IMG/VR virus record: IMGVR_UViG_3300045256_000050
Coordinates: 62,001-126,000 of that record
Reading direction: 5' to 3' (one strand)
Length of the DNA: 64,000 bases
How positions within the stretch are numbered: the stretch's first letter is position 1; the number at the start of each line of letters is the position of its first letter. Under the pieces are notes generated by a model. The model did no database searches, had not been told where the DNA came from, and saw only the letters and a list, made by a program, of their open reading frames with translations. Of this stretch, positions 18,601 through 64,000 are shown piece by piece. Made by a program: the position numbers and the translations under genes.

Positions 18601-18829
18601 GACGCCCGTCGCTACCTCGTTCATGGTGTTCGATCAGATCGACCGGCGGGGGCGTGACACGGTGGTGCGGGAAACCTTCTCGACCGTCACCGAGGATACC
18701 GAAGTGGTGGCGTTCGCCACGGGGGAAGAACCCCGGCCGACCGGCTTCTTCGATAAGGTCGAGCAGAGCGAGAAGGTGAGTTACACAATCGAGTATAAGA
18801 GTGGCAAGAAGTCCACCGGAGAAGTATGA
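15683..18829 (+). CDS. Baseplate wedge gp7 / gpI-like tail protein
   Basis: YLPEMY...LLIYLSNLF...WRRQIKEAITLFKKKGT motif; follows gp6. Confidence 0.75.
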   Translation: MAEKNYNDNPRVTDTVVFDFTTPDAEGCLTSDPYKVDRLVVYYVERNFLGNNFGEYEQVKYNDTLLSQTLAAEQLACTAPTPANIFAAQQLRNELESKAQRNQFFFKDAVPVETVGTPLNPAWLSSDEANAQIEHVTEDEDGNPQFGRFRFKWMPNGSVREGDYFICWTWTPLPAGDSLSAHESFSMLGDPRAVITIPSHITPEEKYEVLLERYLPEMYKNYLADKDITPETTDKLNRAVAKGFKYLEDLANQIIDLYDANALHESLLIYLSNLFNLKLKSDDPTLWRRQIKEAITLFKKKGTLQGLRDAFAQAGMKLEKLTQLWQVVSPYTWVESFRVKDSPVFTLSKRALPVDPDNFGLWIRREGDGVYQEVQSDCVIFEDTDCNFATRMTWVGDELSSNPISLFEGDIIKVMYKYKEVPAGQQSIENYIRSLELADERDEVDQEFPPKNWNVRVIEEDDPLFSVVVPVRHPFHEALVFGWIRTEFPYSENVYNMEEYNGSTRETGDPCLIDKSFTDPCGACIGSKFNIDVSVESLSDDRLSEVRDIIREYTPFHAQVHRINFYGSVNEFVPPPVETIECLVTYRVTDIVLSGNSNPFFTRIMPDGWNLETLGVARDALAENTLVVSETSGIGYNPRIAVVTPNVNLQKIGLNLAKHVFEVLSPSSNAGSYTISNPIMETATVDGGVSEPINEAMFTFQLSNITYDNSQTIITQDDKFSFTSDSVDFVSLGVKTLWDVDNTPNYTGGSWKVSIPAYDATPYEIKEIVEGVLILADPNRTLPTTATSSITFELLDDTDVTRGSAVDGSLEVERYGRVDLNDTAIVDIREFVQVNDKFIYNNFEYRVSGLDDQEFIIEDYVDGDVSGATVEIRRRLVENDIGFFGYAGLKLQTAVDYENSLGILNGENGPEDEDEITDNSQFKENFLVKIGDDYYKIVAINATDITLDGPSNDWMTLDAGGTLVNFSIHQFVETPVATSFMVFDQIDRRGRDTVVRETFSTVTEDTEVVAFATGEEPRPTGFFDKVEQSEKVSYTIEYKSGKKSTGEV

Positions 18830-19302
18830 AACTTGAATCAAGAGTAGATGTATACGGTCACGTCTTTGGCGTGATCGATTACAAAGACGGACGGAGCGAG
18901 AGGTTCGACTTCCCCAACACGATCCTTCGTGGTGGGCGTCGTGCCCTGGCCCTGGGCCTCGCCAATCAGGTCGGGGACGCCTTCGAGTTCTACGTCACCC
19001 GCATGATGTTCGGGGACGGCGGGACGTTCAACGGCGTGAAGAAGTTTGTGAACGCCGACCGGAATGGGTTGTTCGGCGTTACCCGGCTGTCGAAGCCGGT
19101 GATTGCAAACATCGACATCAACGTGCCGACGCAGGTCATCTTTACCTCGGTCATCACGTTCGACGAGGCGGTTGGCGTCGTCCTGAACGAGATGGCCTTG
19201 CAGATGGCGACCGGCGACTTGTACAGCATGGTGACGTTCCCGGACTTGAGCAAGACTGAGGAAATGCAGATCACCTGGAACTGGCACATCTCTTACAGCT
19301 AA
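18826..19302 (+). CDS. Tail fibre attachment / tail-collar-type protein
   Basis: NTILRGGRRALA...VTRMMFGDGG...VIFTSVI...LNEMAL pattern found at fibre N-termini; follows gp7-like gene. Confidence 0.55.
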   Translation: MKLESRVDVYGHVFGVIDYKDGRSERFDFPNTILRGGRRALALGLANQVGDAFEFYVTRMMFGDGGTFNGVKKFVNADRNGLFGVTRLSKPVIANIDINVPTQVIFTSVITFDEAVGVVLNEMALQMATGDLYSMVTFPDLSKTEEMQITWNWHISYS

Positions 19303-19310
19303 AAGGTAAC

Positions 19311-19754
19311 ATGAAGACTGTTGAAGAATGGATTGCGAAGTGGAATGAGACTCGGCTGTTGACCAACCTGCCGGAAGAGAAAGTCAGGCCGACGGCCTGT
19401 GCGTTGTCCAACCAGATCGGCTACAACGAGCGGAGTCAATTCCTGCCTGCGTTCCAGCGGTTGTCCATCCCCATCCTGCGGCGGGTGTTCGGCGGGATGA
19501 AGGCTAAGAATGTGACATCCAAGTTGGTTGAGACGCCGACCAAGAGCCACGTCGTCAACCTAGACCCTTTCAACGTTACGGAACTACAGTATGACGGTCA
19601 TGGTGGATACAACCTTGAGTTTGAGGCCCAGCGGACCGCCGAATACTGTGTCAAGCTCGCCGAGTACATCGACGAGTTGGCTTCGAAAGTTGATGAATTC
19701 GTCCTGCTCGGGATCGGGTGGAACGGATCAAACGTCGTCCTCTATACTGAATGA
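19311..19754 (+). CDS. Small protein whose N-terminal half is paralogous to the N-terminus of the major capsid protein
   Basis: KWNETRLL...TACALSNQ...FQRLSIPILRRVF aligns with KWAKTKLL...TAVLLENQ...FKRISIPLVRRIY of the capsid gene at 63114. Confidence 0.75.
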   Translation: MKTVEEWIAKWNETRLLTNLPEEKVRPTACALSNQIGYNERSQFLPAFQRLSIPILRRVFGGMKAKNVTSKLVETPTKSHVVNLDPFNVTELQYDGHGGYNLEFEAQRTAEYCVKLAEYIDELASKVDEFVLLGIGWNGSNVVLYTE

Positions 19755-19761
19755 AGGAAAG

Positions 19762-20433
19762 ATGAAGATTTACTTAGCAGACATCAAGCCGCAACTGCGG
19801 ATCGCCTGGAAGAATGCCTTCAGGGGCGTAGAGAACGTCCAGGTGTACGAGCGGGGCATTGGCTCCATTCTCGACCTGGAGGTTGACGCCCTGGTCAGCC
19901 CGGCCAACAGCTTCGGGTTTATGGACGGCGGGATCGACGAGTTGTACTCGGAAACCCTCGGGTGGCATGTTTCGGAACGTTTGCAGGATCACATCGTCAA
20001 GGATTTCAACGGCGAGTTGCTGATCGGGCAGGCGACCATCGTGCCGACCGACCATGCGGTGTTCAAGTATTTGATCGCCGCCCCGACGATGCGGGTGCCG
20101 ACCCGTCTGCCGGACAACACGGTGAACGTGTTCCTGGCGACTCGGGCGGCGTTGTTCCTGGCGGACAAGATGGCAAAGCGTGGGCTACTGACTTCCGTGG
20201 CGTTCCCCGGCTTGGGGACGGGCATCGGGGCGGTATCCCCGGAGAAGTGCGCACTCCAGATGCGTGCGGCTTACGATTGGGTGTTCAACAACGAACGCCC
20301 GGAGATGGAGTGGAAGAAGGTTCTCGACCACCACACCTACCTCTACACTGGACTTCGGGCAACTAACACTTGGGAGATGTCCGATAACGACCCAGACCCG
20401 GAACTCGGGTGGGAAGACGAACTAGAACAATAA
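19762..20433 (+). CDS. Macrodomain (ADP-ribose binding/hydrolase) protein
   Basis: DALVSPANSFGFMDGGID and SVAFPGLGTGIG motifs; ATG at 19762 after GGA SD. Confidence 0.9.
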   Translation: MKIYLADIKPQLRIAWKNAFRGVENVQVYERGIGSILDLEVDALVSPANSFGFMDGGIDELYSETLGWHVSERLQDHIVKDFNGELLIGQATIVPTDHAVFKYLIAAPTMRVPTRLPDNTVNVFLATRAALFLADKMAKRGLLTSVAFPGLGTGIGAVSPEKCALQMRAAYDWVFNNERPEMEWKKVLDHHTYLYTGLRATNTWEMSDNDPDPELGWEDELEQ

Positions 20434-20445
20434 GAAAGGACGAAC

Positions 20446-20694
20446 ATGGACATTTCGCATGTAATGATTGGTTTCGACAAGCTGGAGGAAGCCCTGGGTC
20501 TGCGGGGCTACGCAACCATCGTGGCTTGTAAGGAACACGAAAGTGGGCGGCACTTAACTCTGCGTTTGATTTCAGAACGTGCCCCGAGAGAGATAAATAT
20601 CCAAGAAGGAGAGCCGCTGTCCAAGCTGGGTGAAGCCTACCGTCCGGTAGAAGTCGCCGAAGTGCAGGTGGTGAAGGCTCCCGCCATCGAGTAA
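20446..20694 (+). CDS. Small hypothetical protein
   Basis: 82-aa ORF with AAGGA SD. Confidence 0.7.
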   Translation: MDISHVMIGFDKLEEALGLRGYATIVACKEHESGRHLTLRLISERAPREINIQEGEPLSKLGEAYRPVEVAEVQVVKAPAIE

Positions 20695-20704
20695 AAGGTG
20701 AAGA

Positions 20705-21490
20705 ATGCCTCGTATTGAGCTAATCACAGTCCCACTGTACAACCCGACTGACCCGTACCACTTTGAGTTCGACAACATCCCGTTGAAGAACATCTTGCGG
20801 CGGCAGAACCTCATCAATCTGTCGCTCGACAACGTGATCGAGCAGATTCGGGATGCCATCGGCACGCAGGGGAGCATGGCGAACCGGCTCAACCAGTCGA
20901 TCAACGCCGACGGTAGTCTGAAGACGGACGCCATTGACGAGGCACTTCACAGCGTTGAGGAACACGAAGACACGGTAGACTATGTTCGTATGCTCCGGTC
21001 CGAGTCCGACAAGCTGGCGTTGATCGCCGACGAGGCGACCAACACTTCTTTGGAAATTCAGCTTGACGACGACGGGGATGATGTCGTAACATTAGACAAT
21101 GGTCCGGCGAGACTCGTCCCCAGCAACACGGTGACGTGGAGCGTCGAGTCCCCGAACAAGATCAGTGCAAATCTGGCGTTCCCGGCCGAGGCTGCCCACA
21201 AGCATTACTACGACCAGGAACCAGTTCCCGCCGATCTCACCGAGCCGGACTACATTAACTACAAGGTAAACTCAGCGGCCACGCCGTTCGTCGAAGGCAC
21301 CCTGCGTGTCTACATCAACGGCGTGCGGTTGTCCGCCACAACTTCCATCTACGTCCCAGGCGCACTGGTAAACGACCCCTGGACGCTGATGACCTACACG
21401 CCCGACTTCGAGAACGGCACGTTCGCCCTTTCTACCGCCGTGTCCGAAGAGGACGTAGTAAGAATTGACTATGACATCTCGTACATCTAA
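20705..21490 (+). CDS. Putative virion structural (tail-associated) protein
   Basis: C-terminal GTLRVYINGVRL...VVRIDY beta-domain common in tail proteins; acidic. Confidence 0.6.
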   Translation: MPRIELITVPLYNPTDPYHFEFDNIPLKNILRRQNLINLSLDNVIEQIRDAIGTQGSMANRLNQSINADGSLKTDAIDEALHSVEEHEDTVDYVRMLRSESDKLALIADEATNTSLEIQLDDDGDDVVTLDNGPARLVPSNTVTWSVESPNKISANLAFPAEAAHKHYYDQEPVPADLTEPDYINYKVNSAATPFVEGTLRVYINGVRLSATTSIYVPGALVNDPWTLMTYTPDFENGTFALSTAVSEEDVVRIDYDISYI

Positions 21491-22046
21491 GAAAAAGGCA
21501 GAGGTAGTACGTCCCGAGTTCGGGTTCGTGATCCTCTGCCCGGAACGCAACCTCGGTGGGTTAAAGAACACCGTCAACTCGATCAAGAGCCACTTCCCGG
21601 AATGCTCCTACGTCTGCACCGTCGGCGACGACGTGCAGAAGGACGAGTTGGCCGAGATGATCGGGATTTGCAACACCGTCAAGGCCGGGAACACGATCAC
21701 GTCCCTCATCAACGTGGGGATGAAGCACTCGGACGCCGAGTGGAACATCATCGTCTTTTCCGGTAGCTGGCTCCGCACCAGCCTCATCAACAAGGCCAGG
21801 ACGTTCATCAAGAGCGACCGGGATGTGTTGTTCCCGGTGGTTGACTGGAAGACGAACTTCGTGGACGGCTCGATGAACGGCATATTCCTGCACCGCAAGA
21901 TGTTCGAGGACGCCGGTGAGTTCCCCGCCGGGGCGATGGAGAAGGCGGGCGTGAGCGACATCGAGATGGCGAAGCTGTTTTGGGCGGCTGAGGCCATCGA
22001 GAAGGGTGCGATCTTCAAAGCCATCGTGGGAATGCGAGTGTGTTAA
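21471..22046 (+). CDS. Degenerate GT-A (family 2-like) glycosyltransferase-fold protein
   Basis: FVILCPERN...LINVGMKHSDAEWNIIV resembles the GT2 N-terminal domain; no clear DxD. Confidence 0.45.
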   Translation: MTSRTSKKKAEVVRPEFGFVILCPERNLGGLKNTVNSIKSHFPECSYVCTVGDDVQKDELAEMIGICNTVKAGNTITSLINVGMKHSDAEWNIIVFSGSWLRTSLINKARTFIKSDRDVLFPVVDWKTNFVDGSMNGIFLHRKMFEDAGEFPAGAMEKAGVSDIEMAKLFWAAEAIEKGAIFKAIVGMRVC

Positions 22047-33826: not shown

Positions 33827-34066
33827 ATGAACGCCGGTTACTTTTACTGCCCGTACATCCCGTTGCAAGATTCACCCACGGTTCTTGCGCCGGAGGGGAC
33901 GGAGTTCCCACAGGATGACGCCAGAACCATTAACGACATCGTGAACGGTCATGAGCGGTGGCGGTACGACGAGGACGACTACGACCCGTACTTCGATCCG
34001 GCCTCCGTGTTCTACATGGGTGGCAGTCTGCCCATCGACTTTGACTGGCTAAAGGAAGGATTCTGA
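33827..34066 (+). CDS. Small protein with gp23 C-terminal motif and DWLKEGF end
   Basis: MNAGYFYCPYIPL matches the gp23-family AG.FYCPY.PL motif. Confidence 0.65.
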   Translation: MNAGYFYCPYIPLQDSPTVLAPEGTEFPQDDARTINDIVNGHERWRYDEDDYDPYFDPASVFYMGGSLPIDFDWLKEGF

Positions 34067-35049: not shown

Positions 35050-35292
35050 ATGCCTCAGCGTATTACACCCGTGAAGGTCATGTCCGTGAGCCAGAATGGC
35101 GAGTGCCATCTGACGATCACGTTGGAGTTGAACATCAATTTGACCGCCAACGGTGAGATCGGTGCGTCACTGCAAGCTCAGGGAGAGAAGCCTATGAAAG
35201 CCCGGCCGATTCAGGAAGACGATGATGTCGAACTTACGGTCCCGGATTTCGTATCGGGTATGAAGCTGGACTTTGGTAAACAAGTGGAGTGA
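35050..35292 (+). CDS. Small hypothetical protein
   Basis: 80-aa ORF directly upstream of the actin-like gene. Confidence 0.7.
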   Translation: MPQRITPVKVMSVSQNGECHLTITLELNINLTANGEIGASLQAQGEKPMKARPIQEDDDVELTVPDFVSGMKLDFGKQVE

Positions 35293-35297
35293 AAGAA

Positions 35298-36308
35298 ATG
35301 GCTATTGGATTCGACGCCGGAACCTACAACTTGGTGTGCTGCCACCGCAACGATAAGGGAGACTTCCTTTACCGCCGGGAGGTTAACGCCTTCTTGGAAA
35401 TGCCTCTTGAGAACAAGTTCGTCTACAACATGATGAAGAAGGCAGGCGTGCCGCTGATCCTCCGGGAAGATGCGAACGTCGCCTACGCCATCGGTGAGGC
35501 CGCTGTCGAGATGGCTTACACGATGCCCCAGATCGAGCTTCGCCGCCCGATGAAGGACGGCTGTGTCAACCCGAAGGAGCGTGACGCTTTTCAAATCTTG
35601 AACATCATGGCCCACAGCCTGATCGGGGACGTTGCGGAAGACAAGACGACCCTGTACTACTCCGTCCCGGCCAACGCCGTGAACACAGAGACGGACGCTG
35701 ACTACCACCGCAAGATTCTCGACGCCATCTTCAAGGCGTACAAGAGCAAGAATGGGTACATCGTCAACGCCCACCCGATCAACGAAGCCCTCGCCCTGAT
35801 CTACGCCGAGTTGGCGAACAAGGCGTTCACGGGCATCGGCATCAGCTTCGGGGCCGGTATGGTCAACCTGTGTTACTCGATCTTCGCCGCCCCGGTGTTC
35901 CAGTTCTCGCTGGTCAACTCGGGCGACTGGATCGACAAGCAGGCCGCTAAGGCTCTCGGCGAGAGCGTGGCGTTCGTCAACAAGGAGAAGACGAAGATTG
36001 ACCTGGGCAAAGAGCCGACGAACAACACCGAGCGGGCCATCGGCACTCAGTACAAGCTCATGATCGAGAAGACCGTCGCCGGGATCAAGAAGGGTCTGGA
36101 AGACAGCAAGAAGGGTAACACCGCCGAGGCCGTTGACGTGGTGATCGCCGGTGGCACGTCGAGTCCTCCGGGCTTCGACAAGCTGTTCGAGACGGTGCTG
36201 CGTGAGGCCGAACTGCCGATCAAGATTGGCAAGGTCATCCGCCCGGCCGACCCGCTGTACAGTGTGGCCCGTGGCTGCCTCGTAGCAGCGGAGAACGCCA
36301 ATGTCTAA
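35298..36308 (+). CDS. Actin-fold ATPase (MreB/FtsA/ParM-like)
   Basis: Phosphate-1 IGFDAGT, phosphate-2-like GISFGAG, adenosine motif IAGGTS, terminal PLYSVARGCL. Confidence 0.85.
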   Translation: MAIGFDAGTYNLVCCHRNDKGDFLYRREVNAFLEMPLENKFVYNMMKKAGVPLILREDANVAYAIGEAAVEMAYTMPQIELRRPMKDGCVNPKERDAFQILNIMAHSLIGDVAEDKTTLYYSVPANAVNTETDADYHRKILDAIFKAYKSKNGYIVNAHPINEALALIYAELANKAFTGIGISFGAGMVNLCYSIFAAPVFQFSLVNSGDWIDKQAAKALGESVAFVNKEKTKIDLGKEPTNNTERAIGTQYKLMIEKTVAGIKKGLEDSKKGNTAEAVDVVIAGGTSSPPGFDKLFETVLREAELPIKIGKVIRPADPLYSVARGCLVAAENANV

Positions 36309-36726: not shown

Positions 36727-37191
36727 ATGGCAGCTAACATGTTTGGAATCGATATGGAAGAGAGTTTCTTGGATCACGACGAAGTGGTCAAGATGCTGGA
36801 GGCGGCGGGCACCCGATGTGCCTGGGATTTCAACACGGCCCTGGGCGACACGATCCGTGAGAAGTACGAATCCCTGTACATCAAGGTTGTGGAAGTCACC
36901 AACGTCCTGATTCGTAAGGGGGCGAGCGGGTTGTTCTGGATTTGTGCCTCGCCGGAAGTCGCCTCGATCTTCGAGGTTGCGACGATGGGCTTCTACCCGA
37001 CCAGTGCGGAACAGATCGAGTTGGGCACCAAGAAGGTTTACAAGCTCGGGGTCATGCAACGCCGGTGGAGCATCTACGTTGACCCGTCGCTCGACGGCAA
37101 CAAGGTTTTGATCGGGTGTGGCGAACACAAGATGCACGAGGGCGACGAAAAGAGCTACGCCGCAATGACCGTGGCTAACTTTGTCATCTGA
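36727..37191 (+). CDS. Small protein paralogous to the C-terminal half of gp23 major capsid protein
   Basis: WICASPEVASIF...GVMQRRWSIYVDP...NKVLIG resembles gp23-family FII.S..VAS.L...G.L.G.Y.VY.D...VGYKG. Confidence 0.7.
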   Translation: MAANMFGIDMEESFLDHDEVVKMLEAAGTRCAWDFNTALGDTIREKYESLYIKVVEVTNVLIRKGASGLFWICASPEVASIFEVATMGFYPTSAEQIELGTKKVYKLGVMQRRWSIYVDPSLDGNKVLIGCGEHKMHEGDEKSYAAMTVANFVI

Positions 37192-59417: not shown

Positions 59418-59567
59418 GATGCCTCTGAAAAAACGACCGTGCGGCATAACTACAGGTTAGTAGGCATTATTTGCCGCCACCGTATATAAGCGAACGTACC
59501 GTCAAATCGGCCGCACGGACCATAGATAATAGCGAGAGTGGCAAACATTATCGAGGAGTTAAGAGAT

Positions 59568-61400
59568 ATGCGACGTAAACTCATCAAGCAAGATGCCTTC
59601 GAGCAGATCGCCAATACCTCAATCAATGCAGCAGCTACCGAGTTAGTCGAAGCCGGTGATGTCCTAGCCAAGAAGCTTGGCAAGGGCACTCTCTCGCTTC
59701 ACTGCTTTAATGAATCCACTGCTGTTTACGAATCGGATGACGAAACCTACGTCCACGCCGGTTACGAGATTGAGAATGGTAAGATCACCTTCCAGAACAT
59801 CGAGGAACTGGTTGTAGACCACGACTCGAAGAAGGAAAAGCAGAAGGCAATTCTGTCGGAAGTTCTCGATGCCGTTTTGACGGATAACAACGAGAAGGCA
59901 TCCGAACTGTACAAGGGCTACCTGGGCCTTCACTCGTGGAACGAGTCGAAGAAGATGTTGTTCGGTAAGGACGACAAGAAGGACGGCAAGAAGATGCCGC
60001 CGTGGCTCAAGGGCAAGAAGGATAAGGATGGCGATGACGAGAAGGACGGCAAGAAAGTTCCGGCCTTCATGAAGAAGAAGGGCGACAAGAAGGACAAGAA
60101 GGGTGACAAGAAGTCCCCGGAGTTCATCAAGAACCTGAAGGGTGCTGGCAAGAAGATCGAGGAAGCTTGGCACGTTGCTAACAACGTCCTCAGCTACGTC
60201 GAGTTCGTCAACCTCGGCCCGGTTCTGTCTGAGTCCGCAGTCGCTACCGACGACAACGGCAACGTTGTTGGCGTTCAGATTCCGACCGTTAAGGTTCGCA
60301 ACGAGGGTAAGGTTCTCAAGTTCAACTGGCGCACTCTCAACGAGAAGTGCAAGAGCCTGCGTGAGTCCGCTCTTTCCCTGTGGGAGAACCAGAAGTTCTG
60401 CAAGTTGGTTGCGGAACTGAAGAAGCAGAACAACGTCTCCAACCCGCAGGCTCTCGAAGAGTCGCTGGAAGAGATTGTCAAAGAATTCCCGCAAGTCCTC
60501 TACGCCACCCAGAGCGAACTCGCTCAGGTGATCGGCGAGTCGCTGCGTCTTGTTGGTGTTACCAACTACGGCGACCGGGACTGTGAATTCTTGGCCGAGG
60601 GCGTTCTGCGTCACGCACACGGTTCGTACTCCGAGCGTGTTAACCAAATCCTGCATCTCGCTTCCGCCCCGAAGGTTGAAGAAGGTACTGATCCTTACGA
60701 GTTCTTCCAGAGCGTCGTAGAGCAGTTCTTCCCGGCCGTGGACGAGAAGTTCGAGTTGGAGCAGCGTGTGTTCAGCGACTTGTACGAGTCGTTCGAGAAC
60801 ATCTACAAGGCCGCAGACCGTCGTGGCGACCGTGAAACCATGAAGGTTTCCGCCAGCTACCTGAACGATCTGGCCGACGTACTCAACGGCGATGCGAAGG
60901 CAGATGTCTCGCTGGCCGAAGAAGCTGCCACCTTCCTCGTTGACTTCATCGAAGCCAACCTGCCGGGTGCTGGTAGCTGGAACGTAAGCAACAAGCCGCA
61001 CGTCACGGTTGTGGGCGACCACCCGGACATGGCTAAGAAGGCTTCCGTTGACGGCGTGCCGGGCAAGTACAAGGGCGATTGGGGTGACGAAGCCCCGATG
61101 ATCGGCCAGGACGACAACAACTACAAGGGCAAGCACTCCAAGACCGCACGCAAGTCGTCGTGGGGCAACGAGGGTGGTAGCGATACCTTCCCGAGCTTGA
61201 AGAACCCATACGTTCCGAAGCCTTTCGGTGATTACACAATGAAGGGCGAGAAGGGCGTTGATAAGGAAGCAACCGGCCAGCACCACTCGACGTGGCAGTC
61301 TAAGGACACTTGGCCGACCCTCCAGAACCCGTATGTCCCGAAGGCCGAGACTCCGAAGTCTTACAAGATGAAGGAAAAAGACCTGATCGTAGACAAGTAA
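59568..61400 (+). CDS. Large putative prohead core protein
   Basis: Lies between portal and protease; GAGGAG SD; Lys/Asp low-complexity block; capsid-like codon usage. Confidence 0.6.
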   Translation: MRRKLIKQDAFEQIANTSINAAATELVEAGDVLAKKLGKGTLSLHCFNESTAVYESDDETYVHAGYEIENGKITFQNIEELVVDHDSKKEKQKAILSEVLDAVLTDNNEKASELYKGYLGLHSWNESKKMLFGKDDKKDGKKMPPWLKGKKDKDGDDEKDGKKVPAFMKKKGDKKDKKGDKKSPEFIKNLKGAGKKIEEAWHVANNVLSYVEFVNLGPVLSESAVATDDNGNVVGVQIPTVKVRNEGKVLKFNWRTLNEKCKSLRESALSLWENQKFCKLVAELKKQNNVSNPQALEESLEEIVKEFPQVLYATQSELAQVIGESLRLVGVTNYGDRDCEFLAEGVLRHAHGSYSERVNQILHLASAPKVEEGTDPYEFFQSVVEQFFPAVDEKFELEQRVFSDLYESFENIYKAADRRGDRETMKVSASYLNDLADVLNGDAKADVSLAEEAATFLVDFIEANLPGAGSWNVSNKPHVTVVGDHPDMAKKASVDGVPGKYKGDWGDEAPMIGQDDNNYKGKHSKTARKSSWGNEGGSDTFPSLKNPYVPKPFGDYTMKGEKGVDKEATGQHHSTWQSKDTWPTLQNPYVPKAETPKSYKMKEKDLIVDK

Positions 61401-63113: not shown

Positions 63114-64000
63114 ATGATGAATTCCCGATTCTTGAACGAAGCTAAGGCCATCGAACAAAAGTGGGCCAAGACTAAGCTTCTCAACAAGATTGAAGACCGC
63201 TTCACTCGTTCCGCCACTGCTGTTCTTCTGGAAAACCAGTGGTTGATGAATGAAGCGATGACGGATACGGGCGACATTGCCAGCTTCAAGCGTATTAGCA
63301 TTCCGCTGGTTCGCCGTATCTACCCGCAGTTGATTGCGAACAAGATTGTGTCGGTTCAGCCGCTTCTCGGCCCGACGGGTCTTGTGTACTACCTCCGCTT
63401 CCGCTACTCGTCCAACAAGGGCGGCATGCGTGGCGCAAGCCTCCAGGGCGGCTACCCGAGCGACGACGCAGCATCGCTGCAACAGTTGGCTTCCGGTGAC
63501 GGCAACCTGGAAATCTACTACACCCACCAGTTCGTACAGAACGAAGTTTCTTCGACGCATCCGGGTGGTAGCAGCGTAGCAGCAGTGTACGCACCGCTGG
63601 AACACACTCCGGTTCTTCCGGGTGCGTTCACCGGCACCGTGTACGACGGCAGCACCGCAATCCAGACCTTCATTGTGTCCACGTCTGGCGTGTTCACCTT
63701 CACGGACATCGGCACCCCGACCGTCAAGGCTCAGTCGAGCGGTTCGTCCATCGACCTGAACACCGGCGAAGTTGTTCTGCAATGGACCGGCGGCGATCCT
63801 GGTGACAACCACTTCGTTGCCTCCTACGAGTACAACATGGAGTGCAACCAAGACCTTCCTGAAGTCAACCTCGTCGTTGAGTCGGAAGAAATCGCAGCCA
63901 AGACCCGTAAGTTGAAGGCTGTGTGGAGCTACGAGGCTCAGCAAGACCTGCGTTCCCAGCACAACCTGGACGCCGAAGCTGAGTTGACGAGCGTCCTGGC
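63114..64000 (+). CDS. gp23: Major capsid protein (gp23-like), partial; runs off right edge
   Basis: Manual translation (absent from ORF track): TAVLLENQ, IPLVRRIYP, VSVQPLLGPTGLVYYLR, AAKTRKLKAVWSYEAQQDL...LDAEAEL. Confidence 0.97.
   Translation, partial: MMNSRFLNEAKAIEQKWAKTKLLNKIEDRFTRSATAVLLENQWLMNEAMTDTGDIASFKRISIPLVRRIYPQLIANKIVSVQPLLGPTGLVYYLRFRYSSNKGGMRGASLQGGYPSDDAASLQQLASGDGNLEIYYTHQFVQNEVSSTHPGGSSVAAVYAPLEHTPVLPGAFTGTVYDGSTAIQTFIVSTSGVFTFTDIGTPTVKAQSSGSSIDLNTGEVVLQWTGGDPGDNHFVASYEYNMECNQDLPEVNLVVESEEIAAKTRKLKAVWSYEAQQDLRSQHNLDAEAELTSVL

What the first reader, a model, noticed from the sequence alone, without database searches (positions are those of the whole stretch)
19311..19754. 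gp23 N-terminal paralog fused to an unrelated C-terminal half, placed at the end of the baseplate operon
In-window alignment: KWNETRLL/KWAKTKLL, TACALSNQ/TAVLLENQ and FQRLSIPILRRVF/FKRISIPLVRRIY. Similarity stops around residue 65; the remaining ~80 aa are unrelated. It also begins MKTVEEWIAK, close to the T4 capsid-targeting sequence MKTYQEFIAE.
Basis: seen in the sequence. Interest (0 to 1): 0.65.

Follow-up and report, generated by a model that had tools for sequence, protein, structure and literature searches.

The report
Miniature capsid-protein copy in huge phage
This 147-residue gene of an uncultured huge T4-like phage from a hot-spring mat is a shrunken copy of the phage's own major capsid protein that keeps only its N-terminal propeptide and inner "P-domain" parts, and it belongs to a previously unnamed family of such mini-capsid proteins whose role in head assembly is still unknown.

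Summary
ORF147 residues 2-70 match gp23 residues 11-80 (33% identity; Smith-Waterman 88 against 32 +/- 5 for shuffles, 0 of 5000 as high).

The claim of an "unrelated C-terminal half" is wrong. An exhaustive HMMER search found about 38 small proteins (111-231 aa) that align over the whole length. A profile of their C-halves alone hits the gp23 strand and spine helix (residues 272-305) at 28 bits, against at most 6.4 bits for 5000 shuffles. Two members also keep the gp23 C-terminal hairpin.

AlphaFold gives one compact domain (pLDDT 94, pTM 0.88). Its best shape match is a T4-type capsid protein model (TM 0.62 over 120 residues).

ORF147 is therefore a stand-alone "propeptide + P-domain" excision of the HK97-fold capsid protein. 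It is old and diverged, not a recent copy. It sits in a strain-variable island after the baseplate genes.

The same window also encodes the exact complement, an A-domain-only gp23 derivative at 36727-37191, and a hairpin-tagged 79-aa ORF. A 595-kb relative has similar spin-offs.

Function is inferred only. The likeliest role is an accessory head-assembly protein that mimics the scaffold-facing side of gp23. The likeness to the T4 capsid-targeting sequence is suggestive, not shown.

The parts
19311..19754 (+). ORF147 (P0001), 147 aa plus stop: stand-alone propeptide + P-domain derivative of the T4-type major capsid protein ('mini-gp23')
   Evidence: ORF and translation. Family of about 38 representatives aligned over the full length. 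AlphaFold pLDDT 94.1, pTM 0.88. Best shape match is a Gp23-family model, TM 0.62.
19303..19307 (+). Purine-rich AAGGT just upstream of the ATG. The upstream gene stops at 19302, so the genes are tightly coupled.
   Evidence: Sequence read directly. No promoter- or terminator-like site between the genes.
19314..19520 (+). Residues 2-70: three helices homologous to the gp23 propeptide and first conserved segment of mature gp23. Shared motifs are W..T.LL, ENQ..NE and F.R.SIP..RR.
   Evidence: BLASTP E 2e-8; shuffles; hhalign E 2e-15 and 2e-23; helices 4-12, 22-41, 46-62.
19572..19685 (+). Residues about 88-125: strand and long helix homologous to gp23 272-305 (the P-domain strand and spine helix of the HK97 fold)
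   Evidence: C-half profile 28.3 bits against at most 6.4 for 5000 shuffles. Genome search E 5e-5. P0134 aligns 158-185 with gp23 271-298. Helix 102-124.
19695..19751 (+). Residues 129-147: beta-hairpin, inferred to correspond to the gp23 C-terminal hairpin (about 429-460)
   Evidence: Strands 130-137 and 142-146. In family members P0134 and P0142 the same place holds a clear gp23 440-459 match. Not detectable from ORF147 or the family hairpin profile alone.
19311..21490 (+). Strain-variable island opened by ORF147: ORF147, a Macro-domain gene (19762-20433), an 82-aa ORF and a 261-aa ORF
   Evidence: In LR756511.1 the homologues of 18826-19302 and 21465-22046 are adjacent. A second strain in the source sample follows 18826-19289 at about 87% identity and then diverges. 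Macro domain Pfam hit.
63114..64000 (+). gp23 major capsid protein gene (first 295 of 481 codons lie in the window), the full-length relative of ORF147
   Evidence: Pfam Gp23 109 bits; full length from the genome record.
36727..37191 (+). P0280, 154 aa: A-domain-only gp23 derivative (gp23 303-428 plus the C-terminal tail), the exact domain complement of ORF147
   Evidence: Genome search E 1.9e-30; BLASTP 47% identity, E 1e-27; Pfam Gp23 34.8 bits.
33827..34066 (+). P0281, 79 aa: the first 23 residues copy gp23 425-447 (first strand of the C-terminal hairpin); the rest is acidic and unrelated
   Evidence: Genome search E 1.1e-5; BLASTP 65% identity, E 1e-10.

Best explanation
ORF147 is a real gene for a miniature derivative of the phage's T4-type (HK97-fold) major capsid protein.

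What it keeps and loses:
- It keeps the N-terminal propeptide helices, the first conserved helix of mature gp23, the P-domain strand and spine helix, and a C-terminal beta-hairpin.
- It has lost the E-loop and insertion domain (gp23 about 81-271) and the A-domain (about 306-428).
- These pieces fold into one compact domain that equals the inner, scaffold-facing part of a gp23 precursor subunit.

Where it belongs:
- It is a member of an old, unnamed family of 110-230-aa proteins scattered through huge T4-like phage genomes.
- It is one of several capsid-protein 'spin-offs' in this genome. The A-domain-only ORF at 36727-37191 is its exact complement.

Inferred mechanism (not shown): it is made with the late structural genes and acts as a gp23 mimic in head assembly. 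It would occupy the contacts that the gp23 propeptide and P-domain make with the scaffolding core, the prohead protease or neighbouring gp23 subunits. That would make it either a minor prohead component or a modulator of shell assembly. It is accessory, not essential.
For: Shown:
- N-terminal homology.
- C-half homology to gp23 272-305.
- Three collinear gp23 segments in member P0134 and two in P0142.
- A family of 38 representatives aligned end to end, with near-invariant W11, T14, L17, Q35, N39, F48, R50, S52, P54 and R58, all in segments that are also conserved in the gp23 alignment.
- One confident domain (pLDDT 94.1, pTM 0.88).
- The top shape match is a Gp23-family model, TM 0.62, 120 residues, rmsd 3.4.
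- T4 gp24, the 80alpha capsid protein, encapsulins, and phi29, P68 and SaPIbov5 capsid proteins are among the top 32 of 48,161 chains, though only at Z 3.2-4.3.
- Tight coupling to the baseplate operon.
- Complementary A-domain-only and hairpin ORFs in the window, and similar ones in LR756511.1.

Inferred: the partner. The most conserved residues are shared with the part of gp23 that T4 removes after assembly (65-residue N-terminal region, PMC9958956). This argues for a shared transient assembly contact.
Against: - No experiment or expression data exist. Only contigs were available, and there are no variants inside the gene.
- The one complex prediction (ORF147 with gp22) gave no answer.
- The gene is absent from the complete 595-kb relative and from a co-occurring strain, so it cannot be a core assembly factor.
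- Family members have no fixed neighbourhood: after peptide deformylase, before DNA polymerase III, after a baseplate gene. That pattern fits accessory or conflict genes as well as structural ones.
- Structural matches to solved HK97 folds are weak (Z about 4).
Confidence: 0.6

Rival explanations
1. One reading: a gp23 N-terminal propeptide with a T4-like capsid-targeting sequence serves as a detachable tag. It loads an unrelated C-terminal cargo into the prohead, as T4 does with its internal proteins IPI-III.
For: - It starts MKTVEEWIAK, against the T4 CTS MKTYQEFIAE (bioRxiv 10.1101/2021.01.19.427310).
- A CTS-like start occurs in 13 of 55 family members against 1 of 684 ORFs of this genome.
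- The T4 targeting determinants are residues 4 and 7 (PMC9026906). ORF147 has V4 and W7; the extended members have F4 and F/W/Y7.
- The locus is variable, as internal-protein loci are.
Against: - The C-half is gp23-derived, not foreign.
- N- and C-halves are predicted to pack into one domain, so there is no separable cargo.
- Positions 8-10 are I-A-K, not the L/I-x-E that gp21-type proteases cut (PMC9026906).
- The motif was defined after seeing the data.
Confidence: 0.1
2. Conflict gene: a capsid-protein mimic that works as a decoy or antagonist for host immunity that senses capsid protein, or as a dominant-negative that poisons head assembly of competing related phages.
For: - It is sporadic and strain-variable, and it opens an island next to a Macro-domain gene.
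- It keeps the start of the segment that, from my own knowledge of T4, corresponds to the Gol region of gp23 sensed through EF-Tu by the Lit protease (Gol described in PMC3014915).
- Capsid-sensing defences are known (PMC9712102).
Against: - No defence or anti-defence family matched. PADLOC was not run.
- A mimic of a trigger would be expected to trigger, not block.
- It is co-transcribed with late structural genes, not early genes.
- Nothing here tests it.
Confidence: 0.15
3. Split subunit: ORF147 (propeptide + P-domain) and the A-domain-only protein P0280 (36727-37191) join in trans to rebuild a compact HK97-like subunit, for example a special vertex or minor capsid subunit.
For: The two are exactly complementary. 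ORF147 covers gp23 11-80, 272-305 and the hairpin. P0280 covers 303-428 and the C-terminal tail, and lacks just the hairpin. No full-length gp24-like paralogue was found in the 245 kb held.
Against: - Their ages differ. P0280 is 47% identical to the resident gp23, with near-identical stretches. ORF147 is 33% identical and groups with distant minis.
- LR756511.1 has an A-domain-only ORF but no ORF147-type gene.
- ORF147 folds confidently alone.
- The genes lie 17 kb apart.
- The record is only about 48% complete.
Confidence: 0.1
4. Non-functional remnant of a decayed capsid-gene duplicate that happens to stay open.
For: It is unique to this strain: a cluster of one sequence on two contigs. There is no expression evidence. 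Other gp23 pieces are scattered in the genome.
Against: - About 50 intact relatives of similar length keep the same conserved motifs across very divergent sequences.
- Co-variation is strong enough for pLDDT 94.
- The excision is clean at domain borders.
- It has a start codon with a purine-rich site and operon packing.
Confidence: 0.05

Closest known systems
T4 gp23 major capsid protein precursor (Pfam PF07068, HK97 fold)
   Same: The N-terminal propeptide helices, the first conserved helix of the mature protein, the P-domain strand and spine helix, and the C-terminal hairpin are homologous and collinear. The predicted 3D arrangement is the same.
   Different: It is 147 aa against 481 aa. It has no E-loop or insertion domain and no A-domain, so it cannot build capsomers. 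It does not reach the Pfam model at all. The T4 genome itself gives no hit to the family profile.
T4 gp24 vertex protein (the classical gp23 paralogue)
   Same: An extra gp23-derived gene in a T4-like genome. The solved structure 1yue is among the best structural matches (Z 4.3, 102 residues).
   Different: gp24 is a complete HK97-fold subunit that replaces gp23 at vertices. ORF147 is a one-domain excision.
T4 internal proteins IPI-III with their capsid targeting sequence
   Same: Small, non-conserved, strain-variable head-related genes. They share a similar first ten residues, and hydrophobic residues at positions 4 and 7 matter in T4 (PMC9026906).
   Different: In T4 a 10-residue tag sits on unrelated basic cargo and is cut at I-A-E. 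Here the N-terminus is part of a folded capsid-derived domain, position 10 is Lys, and there is no cargo.
N-terminal delta/scaffolding domains of capsid proteins (HK97 gp5 type) and scaffold-binding N-arm and spine-helix surfaces (80alpha, P22 type); from my own knowledge
   Same: The retained parts are those that face the procapsid interior and meet the scaffold. The 80alpha capsid-with-scaffold entry 6b0x is rank 3 in the structure search.
   Different: Those are parts of full capsid proteins. A free-standing version is not among the families I could find.
Capsid-protein homologues that redirect assembly (SaPIbov5 Ccm)
   Same: An additional capsid-protein-derived gene that could alter shell assembly. 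7rwz appears among the structural matches (Z 3.2).
   Different: Ccm is a full HK97-fold protein encoded by a satellite. ORF147 is a fragment-sized domain encoded by the phage itself.

Membership tests
T4-type major capsid protein (Pfam PF07068 Gp23, HK97 fold) | Scores above the Pfam gathering threshold | tested here: not met
   No Pfam hit for ORF147 even at E 1. Only 1 of 38 family members touches Gp23, at E 1.8e-4.
T4-type major capsid protein (Pfam PF07068 Gp23, HK97 fold) | Homologous N-terminal propeptide and N-arm segment | tested here: met
   BLASTP E 2e-8, z about 11 against shuffles, hhalign E 2e-23.
T4-type major capsid protein (Pfam PF07068 Gp23, HK97 fold) | P-domain strand and spine helix | tested here: met
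   C-half profile 28.3 bits on gp23 272-305 against at most 6.4 for shuffles. E 5e-5 in the genome. Long helix 102-124. Shape match TM 0.62.
T4-type major capsid protein (Pfam PF07068 Gp23, HK97 fold) | A-domain (axial domain) that forms the capsomer centre | tested here: not met
   No counterpart of gp23 306-428 in ORF147. The model has only four helices and three strands. That segment is found instead in a separate ORF, P0280.
T4-type major capsid protein (Pfam PF07068 Gp23, HK97 fold) | E-loop and insertion domain | tested here: not met
   gp23 81-271 has no counterpart. ORF147 has about 25 variable residues there.
T4-type major capsid protein (Pfam PF07068 Gp23, HK97 fold) | Assembles into hexamers or pentamers of the shell | not testable with these tools
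   Needs expression and electron microscopy.
T4 internal proteins carrying a capsid targeting sequence | N-terminal ~10-residue motif with targeting residues at positions 4 and 7 (PMC9026906) | tested here: inconclusive
   ORF147 has V4 and W7. 13 of 55 family members carry an MKTF.EF-like start, against 1 of 684 background ORFs. The pattern was chosen after the fact.
T4 internal proteins carrying a capsid targeting sequence | Protease site L/I-x-E ending at residue 10 | tested here: not met
   Residues 8-10 are I-A-K.
T4 internal proteins carrying a capsid targeting sequence | Cargo unrelated to head shell proteins | tested here: not met
   The C-half is gp23-derived and packs with the N-half.
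T4 internal proteins carrying a capsid targeting sequence | Packaged in the head and ejected | not testable with these tools
   Needs virion proteomics.
Mini-gp23 family defined here (alignment A1) | 110-230 aa; end-to-end alignment with the W..T.LL, ENQ..NE and F.R.SIP..RR motifs, an NLD.EA helix and a terminal hairpin | tested here: met
   ORF147 is the query of the search that found 38 representatives at E below 1e-3. The best are 45% and 38% identical. The profile scores 149.6 bits on ORF147.
gp24-type vertex paralogue | Full-length HK97 fold able to replace gp23 in pentons | tested here: not met
   Length and domain content.

The most novel reading that the evidence does not exclude
Huge T4-like phages have repeatedly cut their capsid protein into free-standing structural domains: propeptide + P-domain, A-domain, and the C-terminal hairpin fused to other modules. 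They would use these as docking pieces that plug into the prohead lattice or core. On this reading the 10-residue capsid targeting sequence of the T4 internal proteins is the last vestige of the same mimicry of the first gp23 helix. ORF147 bridges the two, sharing K-T-x-x-E-hydrophobic-hydrophobic-x-K-W with the T4 gp23 N-terminus and M-K-T-x-x-E-aromatic-I-A with the T4 CTS.
Probability: 0.15. Interest if true: 0.8.

Novelty: new variant of a known kind. Interest (0 to 1): 0.6.

Why it matters
Capsid proteins of the HK97 fold are normally seen as indivisible subunits, with whole-gene paralogues such as gp24 as the only variants.

Here a clean, confidently folded excision of the propeptide plus P-domain forms a family of its own. 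The same genome also carries the complementary A-domain-only protein and hairpin-tagged small proteins.

If these take part in head assembly, they offer small soluble probes for a question T4 reviews call unresolved: how the inner face of the shell and the propeptide meet the scaffolding core (PMC9958956). They may also bear on how very large capsids are built or regulated.

If instead they are decoys in phage-host or phage-phage conflict, they would be a new kind of capsid mimic.

Tried and rejected
Searches that found no relative of ORF147:
- tblastn and megablast of ORF147 and its locus against 50,697 phage records found nothing.
- The same searches for members P0128 and P0141 found only a gp23 N-terminus.
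- The word-indexed protein search found only the query itself.
- Pfam and PHROGs gave no hit.
- The family profile against PDB sequences gave only chance hits to haemagglutinin HA2 at E about 0.5.
- The T4 genome has no hit to the family profile.

Structure searches and models that did not help:
- Foldseek against PDB and BFVD gave nothing significant.
- The ESM Atlas's own single-sequence model of ORF147 is poor (pLDDT 0.45), so its neighbours (GGDEF proteins, kinases) are meaningless.
- The AlphaFold model of full gp23 from a shallow alignment is poor (pLDDT 55). I used it only for secondary structure.
- Complex prediction of ORF147 with the gp22 scaffold gave no answer (score 0.00). This is no evidence either way.

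Locus and context searches that led nowhere:
- The search for related loci with the alignment failed for lack of a conserved word.
- Its hit L007 is a chance pattern match inside an unrelated protein.
- P0125, a 1330-aa repeat protein in the HMMER list, is a compositional artefact.
- The contigs of P0124 and P0134 are too short to show context.

Other negative tests:
- A hairpin-only profile does not detect gp23.
- The T4 late-promoter word TATAAATA is absent from the window.
- Laid contigs show no variants inside ORF147, so no test of selection was possible.

I considered and rejected the idea that the 158-aa upstream gene is a conserved partner. The gene before the closest mini (P0130) is not its homologue but a second mini.

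Full report
**Setting.** The window is bases 62001-126000 of a 244,986-base IMG/VR virus record that CheckV puts at about 48% complete. GC content is about 58%. It carries a T4-like structural module:
- gp5-like, gp25, gp6 and a gp7/P2-I-like baseplate gene;
- large terminase, an 858-aa portal and the gp21-type prohead protease;
- a coiled-coil scaffold candidate, and gp23 (Pfam PF07068, 109 bits).

The nearest deposited genome is the 595-kb uncultured phage LR756511.1. Its gp23 is 67-77% identical. Hundreds of metagenomic gp23 sequences at 80-98% identity lie on contigs up to 634 kb. This is therefore a huge T4-like phage. Public runs that hold the locus are hot-spring and microbial-mat metagenomes.

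**The observation.** ORF147 (19311-19754, +) is read as described.
- Residues 2-70 align with gp23 11-80 at 33% identity, E 2e-8.
- The Smith-Waterman score of 88 compares with 32 +/- 5 for shuffles of either partner. None of 5000 (or 3000) shuffles reaches it.

**The C-terminal half is not foreign.**
- The word-indexed search found only the query. The exhaustive HMMER search of 1.84 billion representatives found 38 small proteins of 111-231 aa that align with ORF147 from end to end, plus one compositional artefact. A profile search added about 14 more.
- The family conserves the gp23-like N-terminal motifs. In the C-half it conserves a Q-Y-D-G-H-G-G / N-L-D-x-E-A helix start followed by a hydrophobic hairpin.
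- A profile built only from the C-half columns scores 28.3 bits on gp23 residues 272-305, the P-domain strand and the start of the spine helix. The best of 5000 shuffled gp23 sequences scores 6.4 bits.
- The whole-family profile, searched in six frames, hits gp23 twice and collinearly in this genome (1.6e-20 and 5e-5). It does the same in LR756511.1 (1.2e-14 and 3.9e-5).
- Member P0134 shows three collinear BLASTP segments against this gp23: the N-terminus, 271-298, and the C-terminal 440-459. P0142 shows two.
- For ORF147 itself the hairpin correspondence rests on the family alignment and the model. A hairpin-only profile does not find gp23.

**Structure.**
- With the family alignment, AlphaFold gives a single compact domain: pLDDT 94.1, pTM 0.88, helices 4-12, 22-41, 46-62 and 102-124, strands 78-81, 130-137 and 142-146.
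- The shape search of the ESM Atlas ranks a cluster of T4-like capsid proteins first (100% PF07068): TM 0.62 by query, 120 residues, rmsd 3.4.
- The Foldseek-independent scan of 48,161 PDB chains places nine HK97-fold proteins among the top 32. They are T4 gp24, the 80alpha capsid protein, three encapsulins, the phi29, P68 and SaPIbov5 capsid proteins and the Pyrococcus virus-like particle. All are at low Z (3.2-4.3), so this is only supporting evidence.
- Foldseek alone found nothing. This is expected, because solved T4 heads lack the cleaved propeptide.
- A low-confidence model of full gp23 has the same three N-terminal helices and the long helix at 279-314.

**What it is.**
- From my own knowledge of the HK97 fold, the P-domain is discontinuous in sequence (N-arm, spine helix, late strands). 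The A-domain is inserted after the spine helix and also takes the C-terminal tail.
- ORF147 keeps exactly the first set plus the propeptide. It lacks the second set, the E-loop and the insertion domain.
- It is not a recent copy. In a tree of the N-terminal segment its nearest row is the mini P0130 (46% identity). The resident gp23 sits deep inside a 41-row gp23-only clade (SH-aLRT 91). Minis and gp23s can be separated by one branch, though with weak support.

**A wider pattern (found in passing).** Searching the genome with gp23 revealed two more small ORFs made of gp23 pieces.
- P0280 (36727-37191, 154 aa) is 47% identical to gp23 303-428 (E 1e-27) and then jumps to the C-terminal tail. It lacks just the hairpin that ORF147 keeps.
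- P0281 (33827-34066, 79 aa) begins with a 65%-identical copy of gp23 425-447.
- LR756511.1 has a 168-aa A-domain-only ORF of the same architecture.
- It also has a 99-aa ORF that joins a CxxC...CxxC module to the gp23 423-467 hairpin.
- It has two ORFs with pieces like the insertion domain, but no ORF147-type gene.
- Free-standing capsid-protein domains thus seem to be a feature of this clade.

**Genomic position.**
- ORF147 starts 8 bases after the stop of a 158-aa gene and ends 7 bases before a Macro-domain gene. No promoter- or terminator-like site lies between them.
- In LR756511.1 the homologues of the 158-aa gene and of 21465-22046 are adjacent. A second strain in the source sample follows the 158-aa gene at about 87% identity and then diverges at 19289. 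ORF147 therefore opens a strain-variable island (19311-21490).
- Other family members lie on huge-phage-like contigs but in different neighbourhoods. One contig has two minis in tandem.

**Mechanism (inference).**
- The best-conserved residues of the family lie in the propeptide helices and the following helix. These are also the conserved N-terminal segments of gp23.
[quoted passage not shown] Contacts between the shell interior and the core are held to be essential but remain unresolved (PMC9958956).
- A soluble domain that presents this face should bind what gp23 binds there: the scaffold, the protease or neighbouring subunits. My preferred reading is therefore an accessory head-assembly protein that mimics gp23, either built into the prohead or tuning shell growth.
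- The one complex prediction allowed (with gp22) returned no answer and counts for nothing.
- Rivals are set out in their own section: a CTS tag with cargo, a conflict or decoy gene, a split subunit with P0280, and a dead remnant.

**CTS likeness.**
- T4's CTS is MKTYQEFIAE (bioRxiv 10.1101/2021.01.19.427310). Targeting depends on residues 4 and 7, processing on residues 8 and 10, and gp21 cuts after L/I-x-E (PMC9026906).
- ORF147 shares M-K-T, E6, an aromatic at position 7, and I8-A9. It has K10, so the T4-type cut is not expected there.
- Thirteen of 55 family members carry an MK[T/S/K/R]F.[E/D].[F/W/Y]-type start, often as an extra 8-10 residues ahead of the W..T.LL motif. Only one of 684 ORFs of this genome does, and that one is ORF147 itself.
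- This is enrichment seen after the fact. It is a lead, not a result.

**Novelty.** Pfam and PHROGs hold no model for the family, and my paper searches found no description of it. I rate it a new variant of a known kind: a domain-excised paralogue of the major capsid protein.

Noticed in passing
window 36727-37191 (+): 154-aa ORF (P0280) that is an A-domain-only derivative of gp23: 47% identical to gp23 303-428, then the gp23 C-terminal tail, skipping 429-469. It is the exact domain complement of ORF147. Pfam Gp23 34.8 bits.
   Followed up: partly
window 33827-34066 (+): 79-aa ORF (P0281) whose first 23 residues are 65% identical to gp23 425-447 (first strand of the C-terminal hairpin). The rest is acidic and unrelated. 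Its stop overlaps the start of the next gene, a GT9-like glycosyltransferase.
   Followed up: partly
L031:1423-1929 and L030:1339-1638 (LR756511.1); also W01 306713-306955 and 125932-126165: The 595-kb relative also has capsid-protein spin-offs: a 168-aa A-domain-only ORF, a 99-aa ORF joining a CxxC...CxxC module to a gp23 423-467-like hairpin, and two ORFs with pieces like the insertion domain. It has no ORF147-type gene.
   Followed up: partly
window 19311-21490: ORF147, a Macro-domain gene, an 82-aa ORF and a 261-aa ORF form an island missing between the conserved flanking genes in LR756511.1. A co-occurring strain in the source sample diverges at 19289.
   Followed up: partly
window 18826-19302 (+): The 158-aa gene upstream (phrog_5417, unknown function) has about 97%-identical short contigs in wastewater DNA and RNA libraries, although the phage comes from a hot-spring mat. 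The match stops within 26 bases of the ORF147 start.
   Followed up: no
window 35289-36308 (+): 339-aa actin-like protein matching Pfam Volactin (PF25216, 230.9 bits), encoded between the two other gp23-piece ORFs.
   Followed up: no
window 59538-61400 (+): 620-aa lysine-rich protein between the portal and the prohead protease, with no PHROG family and a repeated NPYVPK-containing motif near its C-terminus. By position it is a possible core or scaffold component.
   Followed up: no
L011:9509-10402: Two mini-gp23 genes in tandem (P0166, 160 aa, very diverged; P0130, 133 aa, the closest relative of ORF147) directly after a T4_baseplate (PF12322) gene. So a second phage also places minis at the end of baseplate genes.
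   Followed up: partly
L013:3538-4545, L014:1395-2402, L024:9459-10435: In three contigs a mini-gp23 gene follows a peptide deformylase gene, in a conserved block that also holds IF3, a dCMP deaminase and DnaJ.
   Followed up: no
protein P0181 (370 aa; metagenomic): A compact full gp23 homologue that lacks the insertion domain. It carries E-A-Q-Q-D-G-H before the spine helix, closer to the Q-Y-D-G-H-G-G motif of the minis than this phage's gp23 is.
   Followed up: no
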